A stretch of DNA of 64,000 nt from Salpingoeca rosetta (GCA_033442325.1 JAWQFM010000031.1:655497-719496); one strand, 5' to 3'. Positions 46,517-55,547 are shown, numbered from the stretch's first letter. Notes: generated by a model not told the origin, from the sequence alone. Translations and numbers: made by a program.

Positions 46517-47818
46517 TTAGGCTTCCTCCTGTTCCTGTTGGTCTTCTGTCCCTGCCTGCTTGCCCTCACAGTGCTGCTCTGTACGTCGATTGTCTTTCTC
46601 AACTGTTTTCGCTCTCCCGCCAACTCCCTCTGCCTCTTCGCTATCATCCACCTGCACTCTGTCACCGTGAGCATGGTCATCGCTATCACCATCAGCGTCG
46701 TCATCAACAGCAGCGTCGCTATCACCATCAGCGTCATCGTCGTCGTCATCAGCGTGGTGGTCGTTCCTGCTGCCACCACCGCTCAGGATGCTGGAGAGCT
46801 GCTTCAGCACACTCGACCCCATGTTCTCCACAGAGAGGCCAATGTTGAGGGCGGCGCTCGTGTGGGTGAGCGCGCGGTCAAAGTCATCTGCCATGGTTGC
46901 CTGGGCGCTCGTCTTGGTCGTTGCGGCATCGCGCAGCTGCTTGCACAGGATGTCCAGCTGCTGCTTCTGCCGCGTGTCCATGTCCGCCAGCCCGTTCGGT
47001 AGGCCCTCGTCCATGCGCTGAATGTACGCCGCGTGCTGCTGCGCAATCGCGTGCAGGCTTGCCTCAGCCTCCATGCACGCGTGTGCGTCTTGCTGCAGCG
47101 CGTCGATCAGCCCTTTGGCGTACACCGCGTGCTCCCGCAGCTGGATCACCTCGCGATACAGGTTAGAGCACACGCTGTGCACGGACTCAACCTGCTTGGT
47201 CTGGGCGCTCTTCTGGCCCTGCAACGACGCCACCGCGCTCGAGTGACGATGCACGGATGTCGCCAGCACCCGCTGCAGTTCTGTCGCCTGCACCGTTCGC
47301 TGCTTGTTGAGCGTCTCGATTGTTGCGCTCTGCTCCGCCACCTTTCCCTCCAAGTGTGCAATGCGCGACAGCAGGTGCCGCACAAACTGGCTCTCCCGCA
47401 TGGAGCCAGGCGCGCTTGTGCCTGGCGAAGATGACGCCATGGGCGATGCCGTCGATCCTACCGTTGCAGACGCAGAGAGCGGCGTCTTGTGGACAGATGC
47501 CGTCGCCGCGGTGAGAAGATGCGCATCAACACCGTCACTGTTGGCGGACACAAGCCCGGCAACCAGTTGTTGTTGTTGTTGTTGTTGTTGTTGGTGGTGG
47601 TGGTACTGTTGGTGGTGGTGTGAAGGTGTGCGCCTCTTGCTACCGCTACTGGTGCTGGTGTTGGTGCTGGTGCTGCTGCCGGTGCCCGGGCCAGACCGGC
47701 GGCGCACAGATATGCTTCGCAGCCGCACCTCCAAGTCATCACCACCACCACCAAGTGCTGGTGTGGACGACGGCACGCTTGGTGTGGCTGGAGCTGGTTC
47801 GTCGCCCATAATTCGCAT
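46517..47818 (-). CDS. Uncharacterised coiled-coil protein with low-complexity N-terminus and acidic tail
   Basis: Open frame from ATG 47818/47809. Heptad-like LLSRIAHLEGKVAEQSATIETLNKQ... segment; codon usage like neighbouring genes. Confidence 0.7.
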   Translation of the reverse strand: MRIMGDEPAPATPSVPSSTPALGGGGDDLEVRLRSISVRRRSGPGTGSSTSTNTSTSSGSKRRTPSHHHQQYHHHQQQQQQQQQLVAGLVSANSDGVDAHLLTAATASVHKTPLSASATVGSTASPMASSSPGTSAPGSMRESQFVRHLLSRIAHLEGKVAEQSATIETLNKQRTVQATELQRVLATSVHRHSSAVASLQGQKSAQTKQVESVHSVCSNLYREVIQLREHAVYAKGLIDALQQDAHACMEAEASLHAIAQQHAAYIQRMDEGLPNGLADMDTRQKQQLDILCKQLRDAATTKTSAQATMADDFDRALTHTSAALNIGLSVENMGSSVLKQLSSILSGGGSRNDHHADDDDDDADGDSDAAVDDDADGDSDDHAHGDRVQVDDSEEAEGVGGRAKTVEKDNRRTEQHCEGKQAGTEDQQEQEEA

Positions 47819-48049
47819 TCGACAGCACAAAAAAAATAGAGCAGCAGGGCTTGCTTGCGTGCAGGCACACACACACAGGCAGTTTGTTTTGGTTTGGTTG
47901 TTGGGTTTCAGTCTTCTCAGTGAGCGTGAGCGTGTGGGCGCGGAAGGTGAACTTAGGAACTTCAAACCAAGCCCTCCCTTCCAAGCAGCAAGCAGGCTTC
48001 CATCTTTCTTTGTTTGTCGCGCCCAGACATACACCCACGCATCGCCACC

Positions 48050-48608
48050 ATGGCGAACAACAACAACGACAACAACAACGAGCAATATGCCTTTTACATC
48101 TCAATGAGTCGCGCAAAAGAAGATGAGCATGATGCGCTGACGCTGAAGACCAAGGCGACGACGCTGAAGACCACACTAGAAAGTTCACCGCGCGTGTTGT
48201 CCGTGTTCCTGCCTACTCAAGCTCAAACAGAAGAATCGGCGAGAGAAGCCCTGCAACAGTGCAGTACGGTCATTGTGTTGGCGACAAGCAAGTATGGAAA
48301 GGAGTCAACCAATGGACAGGAGAAGCCAGCTACTGGATGGACCTCGCGGGGCGAGCTGGAGTTCTTGAAGCAGAACATGCACAAGCCACGTGTGCTCGTG
48401 AAGGTGCACGATGATCAGTGGCTTCCAGCCAATGTTCGCGAGCTTGCTGGAGGAACAAATGAGGTGCGGTGGAAAGTGACAACGGGAGATGCTGACGCCG
48501 TGCGTGCCCACCTGTCCAAGGTCGTAAACTTCATTCTCAATCCCCATGAAAATCAGCAGCAGGTGAGGTTGTGTGTGCATGCAAGTGTGCGTGTGCGTGT
48601 GCGTGTGC

Positions 48609-48660
<52 letters not shown>

Positions 48661-51600
48661 GACTGCTTGTCTTGTGTGAGACGAGCGAGTGACCTGTGAG
48701 CCTTGTGAGCGCGTGGTGTCGTTGTCATTGTTGTGCGCTTGTTGCTTCGTTGTCATCATCTCATCGCCGCAATCTGGCGCCTACGCCTCGTTTGATTTGA
48801 CAAACGTCAGCCTGCCGAGGCGTATGGAGTGCAACCAATGCAGCTCCCCCAGCAACCACAACAGCCAGAGCAACCACAGCCACATCAACACAAGCAGCTG
48901 AAGCAACAACAACCAAAGCAACCGCAGCCGCAGCCGCAGCCGCAGACACAGCAGCCGAAGCAGCAGCCGAAGCAACTACAACCAAAGCAACCGCAACCGC
49001 AGCCGCAGCCGCAGCCGCAGACACAACAGCACAAGCAGCCCAAAAAACAGCAACAGCAGCAACAGCCGCCACAGCCACAACCGAAGCAGCAGCCGAAGAA
49101 ACAACCGAAGCAGCCGCAGCAGCAACCACAGCCGCCACCACACAAACAATCACAGCAACCACAGAAGCCACAACCACATCCGAAGCAGCCACCACACAAA
49201 CAATCACAGCAGCAACAGCCGCCACAGCCACATCCGAAGCAGCCACCACACAAAAAATCACAGCAACAACAGCCGCCACAGCAACAACAGCCGCCACAAC
49301 CACATCCGAAGCAACTGCAGCAACACGAGCAGCCACACAAACAATCACAGCAACCACAGAAGCCACAGCCACAACCGACGCAGCAGCCGAAGAAACAACC
49401 AAAGCAGCCGCAGAAGCCGCAGCCACTACACCAACTGAAGCAGCCACCACACAAACAATCACAGCAACCACAGAAGCCACAGCCACAACCGACGCAGCAG
49501 CCGAAGAAACAACCAAAGCAGCCGCAGAAGCCGCAGCCACACAAACAATCACAGCAACCACAGAAGCCACAGCCACAACCGACGCAGCAGCCGAAGAAAC
49601 AACCAAAGCAGCCTCAGCAGCCCCAGCAAAAGCCAAAGCAGCTACACCACAACAAGCAGTCGCAGCAACAACAAGGACACATGAAGCCAACACCATCTGC
49701 AAGCGTCCAACTTGCTTGTGTTGGTGCCTTCGTTGGCCTGCTGCTCCTTGTGGTCTCCTTGTGGTACTTGCTCGCGGCACCCGGTCACCTGGAGAACTTT
49801 GATTGCCGAAACGCAACCAACGTTGCGTACTTTCTCGAGCGTGGGCTCACGGAGGCAGGCGACGTGCTGGACTGCAACTGTATAACGTTCAGTCAGCTCA
49901 AACGCGTGCACGGGGACGTCACCATTGTAGCTGGCGTGACAGCCGTCAACTTTGGCTCAATCACTGCAGTCGGTGGCGCCATCACTGGCTGGGACGCAAG
50001 GGCGCTGGAACAGGTTGACTTTGGCGACCTGCGCGTGGTGGGCGAGCACGTCCAACTCCGCACGGATGCGCTCACGCAATTTCGCCTCGAAAACATCGAG
50101 AGGATTGGCGGAACCCTGGATCTGAGACGCAACCCCCTCGTCTCCATCGACTTTGGCGCCCTTTCCACGGTGGGCGGGTCGCTTCGTCTGGGGCGAACAG
50201 CTTTGGACACCATCGACCTGAGCAACGTCACGTACATTGGCGGGTCACTGCACTTGGACCACAACCCGCGATTAACGCGAGCGTACTTCGGGAAGCTGGC
50301 CAAGTTTCACCATGACGTGGATCTGTCGCGCACCAACATCACCAGCATTAGCTTCGCCGGTGCAGCAGGCCATGGGCCGCATCATCTTACACCACTGCCC
50401 TGCCCTCACCCACATCGACATGGGAAACATATCGCTGATTGGGCACGACCTGCTGCTTGCTGACACCGCCGTCACATCGGTCCACCTCCAAAAGGTTCAG
50501 CGAGTCGGGGGCTCCATCAACATGGAGAACAACCCGCGTCTCAGGTACATTGACTTTGGCAACTTGGCATACATCCACGAGCGGCTCGACATCAGCAACA
50601 CCAGCGTGCGCAAGTTCCGCTTCGACGACGTCAGCTTCGTTGGGGGGCACATGCACTTTGCAAACAACCCGCACCTCGTCACCGTCCACTTTGGGAACCG
50701 CCTCACATCTTACAAGGGCTGCCTGTGCATTGATAGCCCTGCCCTCAGGTGGGTGAACTTTGGCGCCATCACCACCGTCAAAGGCGACATTGACATTGCT
50801 TCCTCGGATCTTCTTCTGGAAGTCAACTTCCGTGGCGTCAGGAGCGTAGCAGGCCACGTCATCCTCACGGGCGAGGTCTTTCGAGTTGACTTTGGTCACA
50901 TCACTCACATCGGCGGCCACGCACGGCTGCGCAGCCCACGACTGAATACAGTTGTTGGCTGGGACCTTGCCACGATCAACGGAGACCTGCAGCTGGTGGC
51001 GGCTGCCATTTCGCAACTGGAGCTGCCGCAGTTGTCCCACGTGGCGGGCGGGTTGTATCTGGCACACAACGGCCTGACCAGAGTACAGTTCCCACAGTTG
51101 TCACGGGTAGGCGGTCACATTCGCCTGGGGAACAACAGCTTAACGCATGTTCACTTTGGTGGCTTGGCACACGTTAGCGGGCACCTTGATCTCTCCAGCA
51201 ACAAGATGGTGCGGATCAGCTTCGGCAACATTGCACATGTCGGTGGCACCCTCAACATCTCCCACAACCCGTTGCAGGTCGTGAACACCGGCCACCTTCA
51301 GCACGTGAGCAGGGACGTTCTGGTGACCTCTGAAACGTTGGTTGCGCTGGAGCTGAGTCAGCTCACGCACGTGGGTGGTTCGCTCACGGTGGTGGCGGAG
51401 AACCTGGTCACCATGAACTTTGGCGCGTTGACGAGCGTCAACCACAGCCTCATCATCGCCGTGCACAAGCTGCCCCATCTCAGTTTTGGTACCATCCGCA
51501 CTGTTGGGCGAGACCTCTTCATCGTTGGGCACAAGTGGGCGCGTGGCGGGTTTGCGTTGCACTTCCTGAGCATGCTCTACTTTGACTTTGGCGGCGACCA

Positions 51601-51787
51601 TTTGTCCAGCGTGGACGTGGGCAGCATCGAGCATGTTGGTGGCGACATTGTGGTGGGCGCCAACGGGCTCACCACCATCGATGCAGCCTCCATCAAGCAC
51701 GTGGCTGGCAGCGTTCGTGTCCTTTCAACTCCCTGGATGAATTACGTCATGACCCGTGTTGGATCCGCCTTTGGGCTCGGGCCCTAG
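48050..51787 (+). CDS. TIR-like domain - Q/P/K-rich linker - TM - LRR/receptor-L-domain repeat protein (type II receptor); frameshift at about 50359
   Basis: Exon 1, 48050-48562 (GCCACCATGG context, 171 codons, CAG|GTGAG), encodes YAFYISMS..SVFL..AREALQQCSTVIVLATSKYG..WTSRGELEF..KPRVLVKV (TIR_2-like pattern). Phase-0 acceptor at 48811. TM LACVGAFVGLLLLVVSLWYLLA at about 49711-49776. Many 22-23-aa LxxIDFGxLxxVGGxLxLxxN repeats continue across two frames. Confidence 0.72.
48838..49680 (+). repeat. Gln/Pro/Lys-rich coding minisatellite with near-identical units (HKQSQQPQKPQPQPTQQPKKQPKQP x3)
   Basis: Nucleotide unit ccacacaaacaatcacagcaaccacagaagccacagccacaaccgacgcagcagccgaagaaacaaccaaagcagcc recurs three times between about 49330 and 49615. 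Confidence 0.9.
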
Positions 51788-52296
51788 CTAAGCTCTGCGG
51801 GAATGGCGGGAATCTTGTCTGGGAATGGCCAAGTTGTTCTTGCAAACAAAGAACAAGACAGCTACACATGTGTAGAATAAGAGAATAAAAAGAGCGACGT
51901 CATCTGTGATGTGTTGGGTGTGCACGCGTGCAAGTAGGGCTATGCGTTTTCGCGGTTCGGTGTGTGAGTTAATAAGTATGGGGTTGTGTGTGCGTGCTGG
52001 TGCGTTGCTGCGTGCGCCATTCGCTATTGGCAGTTCGTGTATGAAGGGGCCACGAACGAAACGTCCACATAGTCTGCGGGCTGTTCAGTAAAACAACACC
52101 CTTGTGCAATCTCACATGATTTGAATGAACACGACGCATGGGTGGGAGGCAGAAAGCAACGGTACACGAAAAGAGAACATGATCGTGAGAAGAGGGGAGG
52201 TGGGAAAGCAAAGAAGAAGGAAGTGGCCCTACATGGCTGATTCACGAAATTGGCAAGAAAACAACACAAACACGAAAACAACAGTGGCAGGAAGTA

Positions 52297-54836
52297 CTAA
52301 GGAGTCAACGCGGGCAGCTCGTCAGCCTGCTGTTTGGTTGCACAAAGGAAGCGCAGAACCAGGTTGCGTCGTGCGGAAGAGGATTGATACACAAGCTGCG
52401 CCGACAAAAACCGAAGCAAGAGGTTGTTTATCGTCGGGACATCTTGGCTTGGTGATGTTGCGTGAGACTGCTGTTGCCCGAGTTGCATTTCAAGCAACAT
52501 CCATTGTGCACTTGTGGTAACTCGGTGGTGTGGCCCAAGAGTGGACCGCAAAATTGGAAGTGCCTTGCTTAGGAAGTGACGGGCGCTGTCGTACTCTCCA
52601 GTTTTGAAATATGCACTGCCGAGGTTGTGGAATACACTTGCCGTGTCTGGGTGATTGTCACCGTGCGTGTCCGGTAGTATCTGCAGGCGCTTGTTGAAAT
52701 ACTTGATCGCACTGACGTATTCACCAGTCTTCATGTATGCCTGGCCTAAAATGAGTAAGGTCTTGTCCGTGAGTGGGTGCGCACCCAACTTGAGCTCGTA
52801 GATATTGAGAGCCTCCTTGCAGCTCTTGATTGCACGGACATAGTCGCCTGTCTTGAAATAAACGTCTCCCAGGCACCCATATGTGCCTGCGATATCAGCG
52901 TCACTATCGCCCGGTGCGTCCAAAAAAGCCTCGAGCGCCTGAGTGAGGTGTTGGATCGCTTGATCATACTCTTTGTGGCTGGCGTACGCGGCTCCCAAGC
53001 GACCCTGTGACGCTGCTATTGCTTGTGAACTCTCGCCAGGCATTCGCTTACTCAGTAGCCATGCATTGCGAAAGGCGACAATTGCCAAGTCATGCCTGCC
53101 ACTTTCGTCATACACGTCGCCCAATTCGTGGTACGCAGCAGCCGTGGCTGGGTGCTCCTCGCCCAGTGCTTTCACCCTAACCGCCTGTGCCTTCTGAAAG
53201 TACATTGCTGCGCGGTCGATCTGGCCTCTGCTCTTGTACACGTCGCCCAATTCGTGGTACGCAGCAGCCGTGTCTGGGTGCTCCTCGCCCAGTGCTTTCA
53301 CCCTAACCGCCTGTGCCTTCTGAAAGTACATTGCTGCGCGGTCGATCTGGCCTCTGCTCTTGTACACCTCGCCCAAGCTGTGGTATGTCTTTGCTTTCGA
53401 CAAATTATCCTCTTTCAGCTTGGTTTCTATCTTTGCGGCTTTGTGCAGCTGCTTGAGTGCGTTCTCGTCATCCCCTATTTTGAAATACACGAGGCCCAGG
53501 TTGTGGTACGTGCATGCAGTGTCGGGGTGGTCTGGCCCAAGCTTCTTGATGCGAACCTCGAGCGCCTTCTTGTAATGCTTGATCGCTCGATCGTGTTCCC
53601 CTTTGTTGTCGTACAGGTGGCCCAGGTTGTGTTCCGTTGCTGCGGTGTCCGCGTGGTCGTCACTCAGCTTGTCGGCTTTGATATTCAGGCTCTTCTTGAA
53701 GTATTTTTCGGCTTGGACGTAGTTGCCTCTGCTGTTGTACATTTGTCCCAGATTGTTGTACGTGCTTGCTGTGTCTGGGTGGTTCTCACCGAGCTCCCTC
53801 ACCCGAATTGACAGAGCTTTCTGATAGTAGCTGTCCGCGGTATCACAGTCTCCCTTGTCGTGATGTGCCAGGCCCAGGCTGTGGTATGTTGTGGCGGTGT
53901 CTGTGTGCTCCTCGCCAAGGGTGCGGCGCTGGATTTCAAAGGCCGTCTCAAAGTTCTTGATCGCCTCGTCGTACTTGCTTTGATGGTACCACGCTTTACC
54001 GAGGCCGTGGTAGGTGTTTGCTGTGGATGGATGGTCGTGACCAAAAGTGCTCTCCTTAATCTTCAGAACTTCCTGAAGGAGTTCGATTGCGCGATCATAC
54101 TTGCCCTTGTTGACATACGCGCGCGCCAAAGTGTTGTTGACTTGTGCTGTGTTGGGATGAGTGTCTCCGACGGTGTCACGACAATAGGCCAGGCAGCTGT
54201 TGAAGAAGTCCTCTGCTGCGTCATGCTCTCCAAAGTACGCCATGACCAGGCCGACGTGGTTGCACAACGTTGCAAACTGGTGTGTGTTGTTATCCCCAAC
54301 CTGCTCAGCCTCCTCCACGAATGACCTTGCCATGGCAAGGCACCATTCTCGCAGCTGCCCTTTCACAGCCTTGTTCAAGCGTAGGAAGCCAACGCCGTCC
54401 CTAATCGCCTTGAAGATCATCTCCTTGTCCTCTTCCTTGAATGCGCTGGCCTTCTCTGCTTGCACCGCCACCAGCATGTTCGTGATTGCCCTGTGGTCTT
54501 CAAGCACAGCTTCCCTCAGCTTCATGCGCTGGTGCTGCGGCAGCCTGATCTCCAATTCAACGTGGCTTTCCTGGCTGATGGCGCAGAAGATCTCCCACAG
54601 GCACCACGCGCGTGTCAGTGCGATGGGGTTGTTCCATGGCGTCAACACCAGCAGCACATTGCCAATGGATGCAATGGCACTCTTGAAGGTCGTGCTCCAC
54701 CTTGTCATGTGCATGAAGGGGGGGATCAAGCGTGCGAGAGTGAATAAGCATGTTCGTTTGTTTGTGTGCTGTATGTATGCATGTGTGTGTATGCATGTGT
54801 GTGGATGCATGCGCGCGCGTGTGTGTGTTCGTGAGA

Positions 54837-54915
<79 letters not shown>

Positions 54916-55547
54916 TGTGTGTGTGTGTGTGTGTGTGGTGATGTGAACTTGGGTTTTCTTGCCATCGCAAGTGTCAGAATGCCAGAATGCGCGCGGCTGA
55001 AATCAAACAAAACCCTTCGTCAGCGTGCTGCTGTGACACCATTTCGCTGTTGTGCTGGTATGCCACACCACACACTTAGCAACCAGGGCAGTCACCCCTT
55101 GTCGCTGACTCACCAGTCGTCAGGAAGCGTGGCTTTCACATCCTCGTGCTGGTTGATCGAGAGAATGTCTAACCAGAAGAACGTCGCTTCCTTGGTTCTG
55201 TCTTCATCCGTGTGCTTCTCCTTCGCCTCCTCGGCGTACTCCAGCATGGCGGTGAGGACGTCAAAAATCTTGTACTGCCACGCGTGCGACACGAACACCG
55301 TGGCTGGTCCCACCTCCTCAGGTTTTTTTTTGCGCAGCCGGTCGACGTAGGAGCACTTCCATTCCTTTGTGAGGTGGAGCACAAGCTTGTTGCACGCCTG
55401 ACGTGTGGTGAGCTCCTCATAGTTGTTGGGATAATAATCCTTCAGCAGTGCCATGAGCCGCTTGATCCCTTCGACCGACACCCCGGCCATGCACATGGCG
55501 GCGCCTGCCATTGTTGGTGCGCTTGCAGTTGGCTTTGGATCGGACAT
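52297..55547 (-). CDS. HET/TIR-like N-terminal domain + array of 42-aa kinesin-light-chain-type TPR repeats (2 exons: 55547-55114, 54700-52297)
   Basis: ATVFVSHAW, FFWLDILSINQH, W|WSTTFKSAI, PWNNPIALTRAWCLWEI. Then repeats of LGEEHPDTAxxYxNLGxxYxxxGxYxxA. Confidence 0.88.
53111..53362 (-). repeat. Near-perfect 126-nt tandem duplication of one TPR unit
   Basis: 53111-53236 and 53237-53362 are identical except one base (HPAT vs HPDT). Confidence 0.92.
54835..54936 (+). repeat. (GA)n-(GT)n compound microsatellite in the TPR gene intron
   Basis: Directly visible. Confidence 0.95.

What the first reader, a model, noticed from the sequence alone, without database searches (positions are those of the whole stretch)
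48050..51787. 'Inverted Toll-like' receptor: N-terminal TIR-like domain, Q/P/K spacer, single TM, C-terminal LRR/L-domain ectodomain
Seen: three ORF-track pieces join into one gene through a clean phase-0 GT-AG intron (48563-48810). Exon 1 has the beta/alpha pattern of a TIR_2-type domain (YAFYIS, SVFL, EALQQCSTVIVLATSKYG, WTSRGEL), with a Glu at the position of the catalytic Glu of NADase TIRs. There is no signal peptide, one TM, and then more than 20 repeats of LxxIDFGxLxxVGGxLxLxxN resembling receptor L-domain/Ecm33-type solenoids. Known: animal TLRs are type I (LRR outside and N-terminal, TIR inside and C-terminal), and many TIRs are oligomerisation-activated NADases. Inference: this is a type II sensor with the same two functional modules in reversed order, i.e. 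an independently assembled pattern-recognition receptor in a probable bacterivorous animal relative.
Basis: partly seen in the sequence, partly recalled or inferred. Interest (0 to 1): 0.88.

Follow-up and report, generated by a model that had tools for sequence, protein, structure and literature searches.

The report
Frameshifted reversed-order TIR–membrane–LRR receptor gene
This Salpingoeca rosetta gene has the parts of a Toll-like receptor in reverse order (TIR-like domain inside the cell, one membrane helix, leucine-rich-repeat rod outside), but this copy is the most diverged of at least 8 such genes, carries a real 1-base frameshift and is barely transcribed.

Summary
Exon 1 (48050-48562) folds as a TIR-type domain. 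A leave-one-out profile of its paralogues scores it E 6e-12, and that family's profile hits only TIR domains among its significant matches to solved structures. Glu102 aligns with the catalytic Glu86 of Roq1. It is followed by a GT..AG phase-0 intron (48563-48810), a 298-residue Q/P/K linker (net charge +40), one membrane helix (residues 470-494) and about 28 short LRR/L-domain repeats that fold as an LRR solenoid.

At least 8 S. rosetta loci have a TIR-like exon upstream of such repeats on the same strand. Six were read in full and show the same exon-intron-helix-repeat layout; two have public spliced models (PTSG_03080, PTSG_02597) with an extra SH2 domain. This makes the one-gene model likely, although no RNA read crosses the junction.

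Three points weaken this copy:
- The third ORF piece joins only through a 1-base frameshift near 50359, and contigs from two further sequencing studies show the same extra base.
- It lacks the SH2 domain and the C-terminal cysteine cap, and its TIR domain sits on the longest branch of the family tree.
- RNA is at trace level.

It is most likely a recently disabled or truncated family member. The scan has noted two better paralogues on other DNA. The family architecture appears undescribed in the papers searched.

The parts
48050..48562 (+). Exon 1: 171 codons, N-terminal TIR-superfamily domain (folded core about residues 12-165). Putative catalytic Glu102 at 48353-48355.
   Evidence: Translation. 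Leave-one-out paralogue HMM 45.6 bits, E 5.9e-12. Family profile A2 hits the TIR domains of Roq1, RPV1, RUN1 and SARM1 in PDB. AF2 pLDDT 79.9. Foldseek top hits are TIRs. VIA-align Z 13.6 to the IL-1RAcPb TIR.
48563..48810 (+). Intron, 248 nt, GTGAGG...TCAG, phase 0, holding a (GT)n microsatellite. A second in-phase GT (AAG|GTCGTA at 48521) lies at the position homologous to the paralogues' donor.
   Evidence: Sequence. Six paralogue loci read in full show a (GT)n-bearing intron directly after the TIR exon, confirmed by public spliced models for two of them. No junction read in this gene.
48811..49704 (+). Exon 2, first part: 298-residue low-complexity linker (Q 121, P 82, K 43, H 17; net charge +40), predicted cytosolic.
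49705..49779 (+). Single transmembrane helix, residues 470-494 (signal-anchor, N-in/C-out predicted).
   Evidence: Kyte-Doolittle maximum 2.5 and the only segment of its kind. N flank +4, C flank -3. Eight N-x-S/T sequons after it, none before.
49780..50358 (+). Ectodomain part 1 (frame 1): cysteine N-cap (DC...DCNC) homologous to that of PTSG_03080/PTSG_02597, then about 8 repeats.
   Evidence: Recep_L_domain weak hit.
50359..50360 (+). Frameshift site: one extra base in gccGGtgcag. Ignoring one G keeps the 23-residue repeat lattice.
   Evidence: X1 and X5 contigs identical to the window, 0 gaps. No convincing frame-restoring intron.
50461..50463 (+). Stop codon reached in frame 1 if the frameshift is read as written, giving a 721-residue product with a 35-residue out-of-frame tail.
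50360..51787 (+). Ectodomain part 2 (frame 2): about 20 further repeats in 475 codons without a stop, then the stop at 51785-51787. No C-terminal cysteine cap.
   Evidence: AF2 pLDDT 86.2, beta-solenoid. VIA-align Z 21.5 YopM, 19.8 InlF, 19.5 InlJ. Atlas neighbours are Receptor-L-domain clusters. Remote homologues carry PF01030. No cap found in any frame downstream.

Best explanation
The locus is a member of a family, so far seen only in Salpingoeca rosetta, of type II single-pass membrane proteins. Each has an N-terminal cytosolic TIR-superfamily domain (on the TIR_2/DUF4062-NIR border, here with Glu102 at the catalytic position), a linker, one signal-anchor helix and an extracellular rod of short LRR/receptor-L-domain repeats.

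Inferred mechanism for the family: a ligand or surface that clusters the ectodomains brings the cytosolic TIR domains together. TIR domains need self-association to act, and would then cleave NAD+ (ADPR/cADPR-type signal or depletion) or nucleate TIR/SH2 signalling.

This particular copy has a genuine 1-base insertion near 50359 that ends the reading frame at 50463, after about 8 of about 28 repeats. It lacks the SH2 domain and the C-terminal cysteine cap of its paralogues, has the most diverged TIR domain, and is transcribed at trace level. It is therefore most likely a recently disabled paralogue, or at best a truncated one.

Shown: domain folds, family membership, the frameshift, low RNA. 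Inferred: splicing of exon 1 to exon 2 (by paralogy), topology, any enzymatic or sensing function.
For: Identity:
- Organism and paralogues: (PTSG ids).

TIR nature of exon 1:
- Leave-one-out HMM E 5.9e-12.
- The A2 profile hits only TIR domains at E below 0.07 in PDB: Roq1 1.3e-5, SARM1 0.0035.
- Foldseek's top hits are TIRs, E 2e-5. VIA-align Z 13.6/13.1/12.4 to IL-1RAcPb, RUN1 and SARM1 TIRs over about 130 residues.
- Atlas neighbours are mostly TIR_2 clusters.
- Paralogues pass the TIR_2 cut-off (C8 31.2, C9 29.1, C4 28.4 bits) or the DUF4062 cut-off.

Glu102:
- Paralogue FEELRYI aligns to Roq1 residues 84-90.
- Roq1 E86 is the catalytic Glu (10.1101/2020.08.13.246413).
- The same column of A2 is E in 21 of 26 sequences and E102 in the window protein.

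One-gene model:
- Six other loci read in full show TIR exon, (GT)n intron, K/R-flanked helix and repeats on one strand; a seventh (C13) has a TIR-like match upstream of such repeats on the same strand.
- Public spliced models PTSG_03080 and PTSG_02597 show TIR_2-SH2-TM-repeats.
- The ectodomain N-cap is shared with them.

Topology:
- Net +40 linker, single helix, 8 sequons against 0.

Ectodomain fold:
-. Paralogue Pfam LRR_5 up to 110 bits and Recep_L_domain up to 45 bits.

Defect:
- X1 and X5 contigs show 0 gaps across 50359.
- About 24 reads in X16 and almost none in X15 over unique parts, while the neighbouring gene's 3' end has depth 20-38.
- Terminal branch 3.55 against a median of 0.65.
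- No cysteine cap downstream.
Against: - No read or contig crosses 48562/48811, so the splice is inferred.
- The protein itself passes no Pfam threshold and finds nothing by single-sequence search in 1.84 billion representatives or in PDB.
- By fold alone TIR is tied with DNPH1/nucleoside 2-deoxyribosyltransferase-type hydrolases (Z 12.6 against 13.6).
- The 475 codons after the frameshift contain no stop and fold with pLDDT 86. The lesion is therefore very recent, or the distal part is still used in a way not seen here.
- All laboratory cultures are, to my knowledge, descended from one isolate, so the three data sets are not independent strains.
- No function of any family member has been tested.
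Confidence: 0.58

Rival explanations
1. Functional truncated variant. The gene is expressed as written and makes a 721-residue type II protein with the TIR domain, linker, helix, N-cap, about 8 repeats and a 35-residue novel tail. It would act as a short receptor or as a decoy or regulator of its full-length paralogues.
For: - The frameshift is fixed in every data set laid.
- The upstream part is intact, with the conserved Glu102, Leu103 and Lys112.
- A few X16 reads and X5 contigs lie on both exons.
Against: - Trace expression.
- The long stop-free, well-folding distal ORF argues that the full length was selected until very recently.
- Longest TIR branch of the family.
- No paralogue with so short an ectodomain was seen.
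Confidence: 0.17
2. Intact full-length receptor. The frame is restored in the mRNA (cryptic splice, slippage) or the extra base is a culture-specific lesion, and the 1162-residue protein functions like its paralogues as a surface sensor with a TIR output.
For: - The distal 475 codons are open and fold as a regular solenoid.
- Twenty GT..AG pairs could in principle restore the frame.
Against: - All candidate donors are poor (GTACTT, GTTTCA, GTGGAT, GTCGCG, GTGCAG) and would cut through coding repeats. The best candidate (50360-50504) leaves the lattice 4 residues short.
- The RNA-like X5 contig runs 49915-50631 unspliced.
- No insertion or deletion variant at 10% or more in any run.
Confidence: 0.12
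3. Two separate genes: a TIR-only protein (exon 1 read on into the intron to the stop at 48677-48679, about 210 residues) and a TM-LRR protein starting at the ATG at 48838.
For: - No junction read.
- Both ORFs have possible starts and stops of their own.
- X5 has a contig on 48036-48186 but none on 48305-48787.
Against: - Seven other loci place a TIR-like match directly upstream of the repeats on the same strand; the six read in full have an in-phase GT..AG intron, and two have public spliced models.
- The read-through tail of exon 1 is only translated (GT)n.
- The donor is GTGAGG, which is close to the usual GT[AG]AG donor consensus (general knowledge, not measured on S. rosetta here).
Confidence: 0.07
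4. The N-terminal domain is not a signalling TIR but a nucleoside/nucleotide N-glycosidase of the DNPH1/MilB (NDT) kind, or a purely structural flavodoxin-like module. On this reading the protein is an adhesin-like surface protein rather than a sensor.
For: - DNPH1 and MilB score within Z 1 to 1.5 of the best TIRs.
- The ectodomain's nearest relatives outside the species are bacterial surface proteins.
- More than 160 matches to such repeats across the genome suggest a general surface-protein repeat.
Against: - Sequence profiles choose TIR only: no NDT protein appears in the PDB profile search.
- Paralogues pass Pfam TIR_2, TIR or DUF4062.
- DUF4062 is itself reported as a TIR-like NADase with the same Glu (10.64898/2026.05.01.722283; 10.64898/2026.09.04.749371).
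Confidence: 0.06

Closest known systems
Toll-like receptors of animals and choanoflagellates (LRR - TM - TIR, type I)
   Same: Same three kinds of module: an extracellular LRR-type solenoid, a single membrane helix and a cytosolic TIR-fold domain. TLR ectodomains are found by local 3Di similarity, and IL-1R/TLR TIRs are among the best fold matches.
   Different: - The order and topology are reversed: no signal peptide, N-in signal anchor, TIR at the N-terminus.
- The repeats are short 22-23-residue L-domain/BspA-type units (TM-score to TLR ectodomains only 0.15-0.3).
- The TIR is of the TIR_2/DUF4062 kind.
- There is a 298-residue Q/P/K linker.
- Richter et al. 2018 (PMC6040629) define choanozoan TLRs by the order LRR, TM, TIR.
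S. rosetta PTSG_03080 (860 aa) and PTSG_02597 (728 aa), plus unannotated paralogues at C35, C10, C30, C9 and C13
   Same: Same family. The N-terminal TIR-like exon is followed by a (GT)n intron, a K/R-flanked signal-anchor helix, a cysteine N-cap and xLTSIDFGxLxxVGG-type repeats.
   Different: - The two annotated paralogues carry an SH2 domain between TIR and helix and end in a cysteine-rich C-cap.
- The window gene has a low-complexity linker instead, no C-cap and a frameshift.
- Its TIR domain is only 22-29% identical to theirs.
DUF4062 / NIR TIR-like NADases (human TEP1, NWD1/2; bacterial Swarozyc, Avs2, Vulcan, Vesta)
   Same: DUF4062 is the best Pfam match of exon 1. Several paralogues pass its cut-off. 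The domain is N-terminal with a Glu at the catalytic position. NIR is reported in 96% of choanoflagellates (10.64898/2026.09.04.749371).
   Different: - This protein is below the DUF4062 threshold.
- Eukaryotic NIR proteins are described as mostly NLR-like and cytosolic. Neither preprint contains the word 'transmembrane'.
- The receptor-type paralogues score better on TIR_2 than on DUF4062.
Enzymatic TIR domains: SARM1, plant TNL/TIR (RUN1, Roq1, RPS4), SPARTA TIR-APAZ, ThsB
   Same: Same fold (Z 12-13). The family profile matches them by sequence. Glu102 aligns with Roq1 E86. Plant TNLs also have an N-terminal TIR and a C-terminal LRR.
   Different: These proteins are cytosolic and are oligomerised by SAM, NB-ARC or Argonaute modules. 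Here oligomerisation would have to come from the membrane-anchored ectodomain. No activity has been tested.
Receptor L-domain / BspA-type LRR surface proteins (EGFR/insulin-receptor L domains, fungal Ecm33, bacterial EndoS-LRR and T9SS-sorted proteins; YopM, internalins by fold)
   Same: Same repeat chemistry and solenoid fold. Remote homologues carry PF01030, paralogues have PF01030 and PF13306 hits, and the fold scores Z 21.5 to YopM.
   Different: None of these is joined to a cytosolic TIR through a signal-anchor helix. The window protein itself is just below the PF01030 cut-off.

Membership tests
TIR superfamily (Pfam clan STIR: TIR, TIR_2, DUF4062...) | Flavodoxin-like alternating beta/alpha fold of about 130-160 residues matching solved TIR domains | tested here: met
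   AF2 pLDDT 79.9, with strand/helix elements in the order E15-19, H26-45, H61-70, E73-78, H99-108, E114-118, H127-133, E137-140, H148-163. Z 13.6 (136 residues, rmsd 3.0) to the IL-1RAcPb TIR; RUN1 13.1; SARM1 12.4. DNPH1 is tied within about 1 Z.
TIR superfamily (Pfam clan STIR: TIR, TIR_2, DUF4062...) | Score above the curated Pfam cut-off of TIR, TIR_2 or DUF4062 | tested here: not met
   Window protein: DUF4062 17.4 bits (cut-off 24.7) and no TIR_2 hit. Paralogues do pass: TIR_2 28.4-31.2 bits, TIR 23.9 bits, DUF4062 up to 34.3 bits. The window protein matches the paralogue profile at E 5.9e-12.
Enzymatic (NADase) TIR | Glutamate at the start of helix alpha-C, in the W/F-x(3,4)-E-L motif | tested here: met
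   Glu102 lies in GELEFL, in the first turn of helix 99-108. By transitive alignment it is equivalent to Roq1 E86. This is a sequence alignment only, not a superposition of side chains.
Enzymatic (NADase) TIR | NAD+ cleavage that depends on that Glu and on self-association | not testable with these tools
   Needs an enzyme assay.
Toll-like receptor | Signal peptide, N-terminal extracellular LRRs, TM helix, C-terminal cytosolic TIR (type I) | tested here: not met
   The order is TIR, linker, TM, repeats. The N-terminus is polar, and the only hydrophobic helix is at residues 470-494.
S. rosetta type II TIR-TM-LRR family | TIR-like first exon, in-phase intron directly after it, K/R-flanked signal-anchor helix, cysteine N-cap and 22-23-residue repeats on the same strand | tested here: met
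   SH2 domain and C-terminal cysteine cap are absent.
S. rosetta type II TIR-TM-LRR family | Exon 1 spliced to exon 2 in mRNA | tested here: inconclusive
   No junction reads at the reporting threshold, and too few reads to see one. Public spliced models exist for two paralogues.
LRR / receptor L-domain solenoid | Right-handed solenoid of short L-x-x-I/L-x-F repeats; Pfam PF01030, PF13306 or LRR hits | tested here: met
   Fold: pLDDT 86.2, Z 21.5 YopM, 19.8 InlF, 19.5 InlJ. Pfam on this protein is just sub-threshold (20.2 vs 21.8 bits), while paralogues score 45 bits (PF01030) and 110 bits (PF13306).
Type II (N-in) membrane protein | No cleavable signal, one helix, positive-inside rule, glycosylation sites only on the C-terminal side | tested here: met
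   Linker net charge +40, flanks +4 and -3, 8 N-x-S/T sequons against 0. This rests on hydropathy and charge only; no topology predictor or experiment was available.
Intact, expressed gene | Uninterrupted reading frame and transcript support | tested here: not met
   One extra base at about 50359 is present in the X1 and X5 contigs. About 24 reads in X16 and almost none in X15.

The most novel reading that the evidence does not exclude
The S. rosetta TIR-(SH2)-TM-LRR genes are true surface sensors built independently of TLRs. Ligand-driven clustering of the outside solenoids would switch on an inside TIR NADase or signal generator, coupled to phosphotyrosine signalling through SH2 in some members. 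The window copy would be a recently broken or truncated decoy member, showing birth-and-death turnover typical of immune receptor families in the closest relatives of animals.
Probability: 0.2. Interest if true: 0.8.

Novelty: new variant of a known kind. Interest (0 to 1): 0.45.

Why it matters
TIR domains and LRR ectodomains are the two halves of Toll-like receptors, and choanoflagellates are the reference point for how animal innate immunity began. A family that joins the same halves in the opposite order, with an enzyme-type TIR domain (sometimes with SH2) inside the cell, would be a second, independent way of wiring an outside sensor to a TIR output. It is directly testable because S. rosetta can be genetically manipulated. 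This copy adds little as a receptor, because it is frameshifted and nearly silent. It does document the size of the family (at least 8 TIR-LRR loci and at least 38 copies of the TIR-like domain) and its turnover. The intact paralogues PTSG_03080 and PTSG_02597 are the ones to test.

Tried and rejected
- **Single-sequence searches of exon 1.** phmmer against 1.84 billion representatives gave 0 hits, and phmmer against PDB gave only noise. The domain is recognisable only through its paralogue profile.
- **Homologues of intermediate length.** A search for proteins of 371-1181 residues carrying the TIR-like domain found only S. rosetta ARM-fused paralogues. No other species was found at this sensitivity. 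This is weak evidence for lineage restriction, because the search is word-based and length-limited.
- **RNA evidence.** Reads were laid once on 47500-52300 with two raw RNA runs and two contig runs. No junction appeared at 48562/48811. The listed joints (47655/49046 and similar) are cross-matches of CAG/CAA-type low-complexity sequence, not splices.
- **A frame-restoring intron around 50359.** Twenty GT..AG pairs keep the frame open, but all have poor donors and cut through repeats. Rejected.
- **A C-terminal cysteine cap.** I looked in all three frames of 51640-52320 and found none.
- **An SH2 exon inside the intron.** Impossible: the intron is 248 nt and mostly (GT)n.
- **TLR ectodomain hits by Foldseek.** TM-scores of 0.15-0.3 and rmsd near 20 Å show generic LRR similarity, not kinship.
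- **HET-like reading of the neighbouring TPR gene's N-terminus.** No Pfam support.
- **Literature.** Six searches found no paper describing a TIR-TM-LRR type II protein. Richter et al. 2018 list TIR+SH2/Arm/Ank proteins as intracellular and lacking a TM helix.
Full report
**What is there**

The window is G000:C31:655497-719496 of a 55.4 Mb genome. Protein hits name the organism as Salpingoeca rosetta (PTSG identifiers).

On the + strand an ATG at 48050 opens 171 codons that end CAG|GTGAGG at 48562/48563. An acceptor tcAG ends at 48810, and reading continues in phase 0 from 48811. The 248-nt intron is mostly a (GT)n microsatellite. A second in-phase GT, at 48521 (AAG|GTCGTA), lies where the paralogues have their donor. 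Either donor keeps the frame.

Exon 2 encodes:
- a 298-residue linker (Q 121, P 82, K 43, H 17; net charge +40);
- the only strongly hydrophobic segment of the protein, residues 470-494 (49705-49779);
- 669 residues of roughly 23-residue repeats, with 8 N-x-S/T sequons against none before the helix.

**The frameshift**

The frame-1 ORF runs on to a stop at 50461-50463, while the repeats continue without a break in frame 2 from about 50351. Ignoring one G of gccGGtgcag (about 50359) restores a perfect repeat lattice.

The extra base is present in contigs of three runs' worth of data. Contigs of run X1 (DNA-like, even depth about 11; 49584-52300) and of run X5 (another study, RNA-like depth profile; 49915-50631) match the window with no gaps or differences. 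No run shows an insertion or deletion variant.

I enumerated every GT..AG pair that would restore the frame. All twenty have poor donors and cut through coding repeats. The gene as it stands therefore encodes 721 residues. The 475 stop-free codons after the frameshift still fold as a regular solenoid (pLDDT 86.2), so the lesion is recent.

**Exon 1 is a TIR-superfamily domain**

On its own it is nearly unrecognisable:
- Pfam gives only DUF4062 at 17.4 bits, below the cut-off.
- phmmer finds nothing in 1.84 billion representatives or in PDB.

Its own genome holds at least 38 copies of the domain. A profile of 25 paralogues built without it scores it 45.6 bits, E 5.9e-12.

That family is TIR by several tests:
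- The profile's matches in PDB below E 0.07 are all TIR domains: Roq1 1.3e-5, RPV1, RUN1, SARM1 0.0035.
- Paralogues pass the curated cut-offs of TIR_2 (28.4-31.2 bits), TIR (23.9 bits) or DUF4062 (up to 34.3 bits).
- The AlphaFold model (pLDDT 79.9, pTM 0.76) is matched best by TIR domains in Foldseek (E 2.4e-5).
- VIA-align gives IL-1RAcPb Z 13.6, RUN1 13.1, RPS4 13.0, SARM1 12.4 over about 130 residues.

DNPH1 and MilB N-glycosidases are tied within about 1 Z. The 2026 preprints on DUF4062/NIR report the same pattern. The language-model neighbours are mostly TIR_2 clusters.

**The catalytic Glu**

A paralogue's FEELRYI aligns with Roq1 residues 84-90. Roq1 E86 is the catalytic glutamate (10.1101/2020.08.13.246413). 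In alignment A2 that column is Glu in 21 of 26 members and is Glu102 of the window protein, next to the invariant Leu103. In the model it lies in the first turn of helix 99-108.

**The ectodomain**

Pfam hits on this protein are just below threshold (Recep_L_domain 20.2 vs 21.8 bits). Supporting evidence:
- Remote homologues carry PF01030.
- Longer paralogues score 45 bits on PF01030 and up to 110 bits on PF13306, the BspA-type LRR.
- Atlas neighbours are Receptor-L-domain clusters.
- An exhaustive structural search matches the model to short-repeat LRR proteins: YopM Z 21.5, InlF 19.8, InlJ 19.5, LRIG1 17.8.

Foldseek's TLR ectodomain hits have TM-scores of only 0.15-0.3. They show LRR-ness, not TLR kinship.

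**One gene or two**

RNA does not settle it. Two raw RNA-seq runs give almost no reads on the unique parts: about 24 in X16 and almost none in X15, against depth 20-38 on the neighbouring gene's 3' end. Nothing crosses the junction.

Paralogy does bear on it. TIR-like matches lie directly upstream of L-domain repeats on the same strand at C35, C10, C30, C4, C8, C9 and C13 as well as here. In the six loci I read in full, the TIR exon ends in a GT that opens a (GT)n intron, and the next exon has a K/R-flanked hydrophobic helix followed by repeats.

Two of them have public spliced models: PTSG_03080 (860 aa) and PTSG_02597 (728 aa). Their layout is TIR_2, SH2, TM helix, cysteine N-cap, repeats, cysteine C-cap. 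The window protein shares the N-cap pattern (DC...DCNC). I therefore rate the one-gene model likely. The two-gene rival gets 0.07.

**How this copy differs**
- It has no SH2 domain; a Q/P/K linker stands in its place.
- It has no C-terminal cysteine cap in any frame.
- It carries the frameshift, and RNA is at trace level.
- Its TIR-domain terminal branch is 3.55 changes per site, against a median of 0.65, the longest in the family tree. Its placement next to the TM/coiled-coil paralogue 96 kb away (C31:607583) may be long-branch attraction.

Together these point to a recently disabled or truncated paralogue.

**Mechanism (inferred)**

TIR enzymes need self-association to form the active site, as stated in the preprints read. 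In a type II protein the only module able to bring the TIR domains together is the membrane-anchored ectodomain. The most economical model for the family is therefore ligand- or surface-induced clustering outside the cell, driving TIR assembly inside. The output would be NAD+-derived, or TIR/SH2 scaffolding. Nothing here tests this.

**Literature**
- Richter et al. 2018 (PMC6040629) define choanozoan TLRs by the order LRR, TM, TIR. They list TIR with Arm, Ank or SH2 only as intracellular proteins lacking a TM helix.
- The DUF4062/NIR preprints report the domain in 96% of choanoflagellates, mostly in NLR-like proteins, and never use the word 'transmembrane'.
- The S. rosetta TIR shown to make cADPR (representative F2UPN6) sits at residues 1034-1255 of a 1352-residue protein, so it has a different layout from the N-terminal TIR-like domains of this family; sequence relatedness was not tested.
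- I found no description of the reversed architecture.

The scan itself has noted two other paralogues on other DNA (s1-432383 and s1-432410). Those notes agree with my reading but are not independent evidence.

**Verdict**

The family is a new variant of a known kind, a TIR-coupled surface receptor with reversed order. This locus is its weakest member.

Noticed in passing
window 52297-55547 (- strand): A tail-to-tail neighbour gene. Exon 1 is 55110-55547, followed by an 837-codon ORF with 11 or more TPR_12 repeats (444 bits). Motifs in its N-terminal part (FWLDILSINQ, TRAWCLWEI) recall HET/TIR-like domains, but Pfam gives no hit there. Its 3' end is clearly transcribed, with strand-specific depth of 20-38.
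   Followed up: partly
G000:C31:607583-609200 (locus L003/L040), 96 kb upstream on the same contig: Another type II TIR-like protein. The TIR_2-like exon (E 8.6e-4) is followed by an intron, a TM helix and a coiled-coil rather than an LRR ectodomain. It is the nearest relative of the window's TIR domain in the tree, though this may be long-branch attraction.
   Followed up: partly
G000:C23:384301, C35:355576, C35:480187, C35:543267, C17:622262, C26:766460: The same TIR-like/DUF4062 domain is fused N-terminally to ARM repeats (4 loci), to MLLE plus three RRMs (a PABP-like protein with a 1303-residue ORF), and to a region ending in leucine-rich motifs that got no Pfam hit (C26). At least 38 copies of the domain exist in the genome, a large lineage-specific expansion.
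   Followed up: partly
paralogue loci L069-L074 and window 48563-48810: In the six paralogues read in full and in this gene, the intron directly after the TIR exon holds a long (GT)n/(TG)n microsatellite. It is read as VCVCVC in ORF tracks, and at C10 it is even read through as one 2367-codon open frame.
   Followed up: no
proteins P0012-P0057: Outside S. rosetta, the closest relatives of the ectodomain repeats that carry a source name are bacterial (Verrucomicrobia, Polyangiaceae, Myxococcus, Aequorivita and Winogradskyella); most other hits are unnamed metagenome proteins. Many carry PF01030, LRR_EndoS and, in some, the PF18962 C-terminal domain (T9SS sorting domain, named from memory). Whether this reflects gene transfer or convergence was not examined.
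   Followed up: no
window 47646-47680 and 49046-49130: Very high read depth, many loose ends and 'opposite strand' joints between these two places in all runs. A T>C difference at 47661 is also seen in every run. Both stretches are CAG/CAA-type low-complexity coding sequence, so these are most likely cross-matches from many loci rather than real rearrangements.
   Followed up: no
window 46517-47860 (- strand): A divergently oriented upstream ORF encodes a coiled-coil protein with poly-Q/H and acidic runs and no significant Pfam family. It would share a roughly 200-nt promoter region with the TIR gene.
   Followed up: partly
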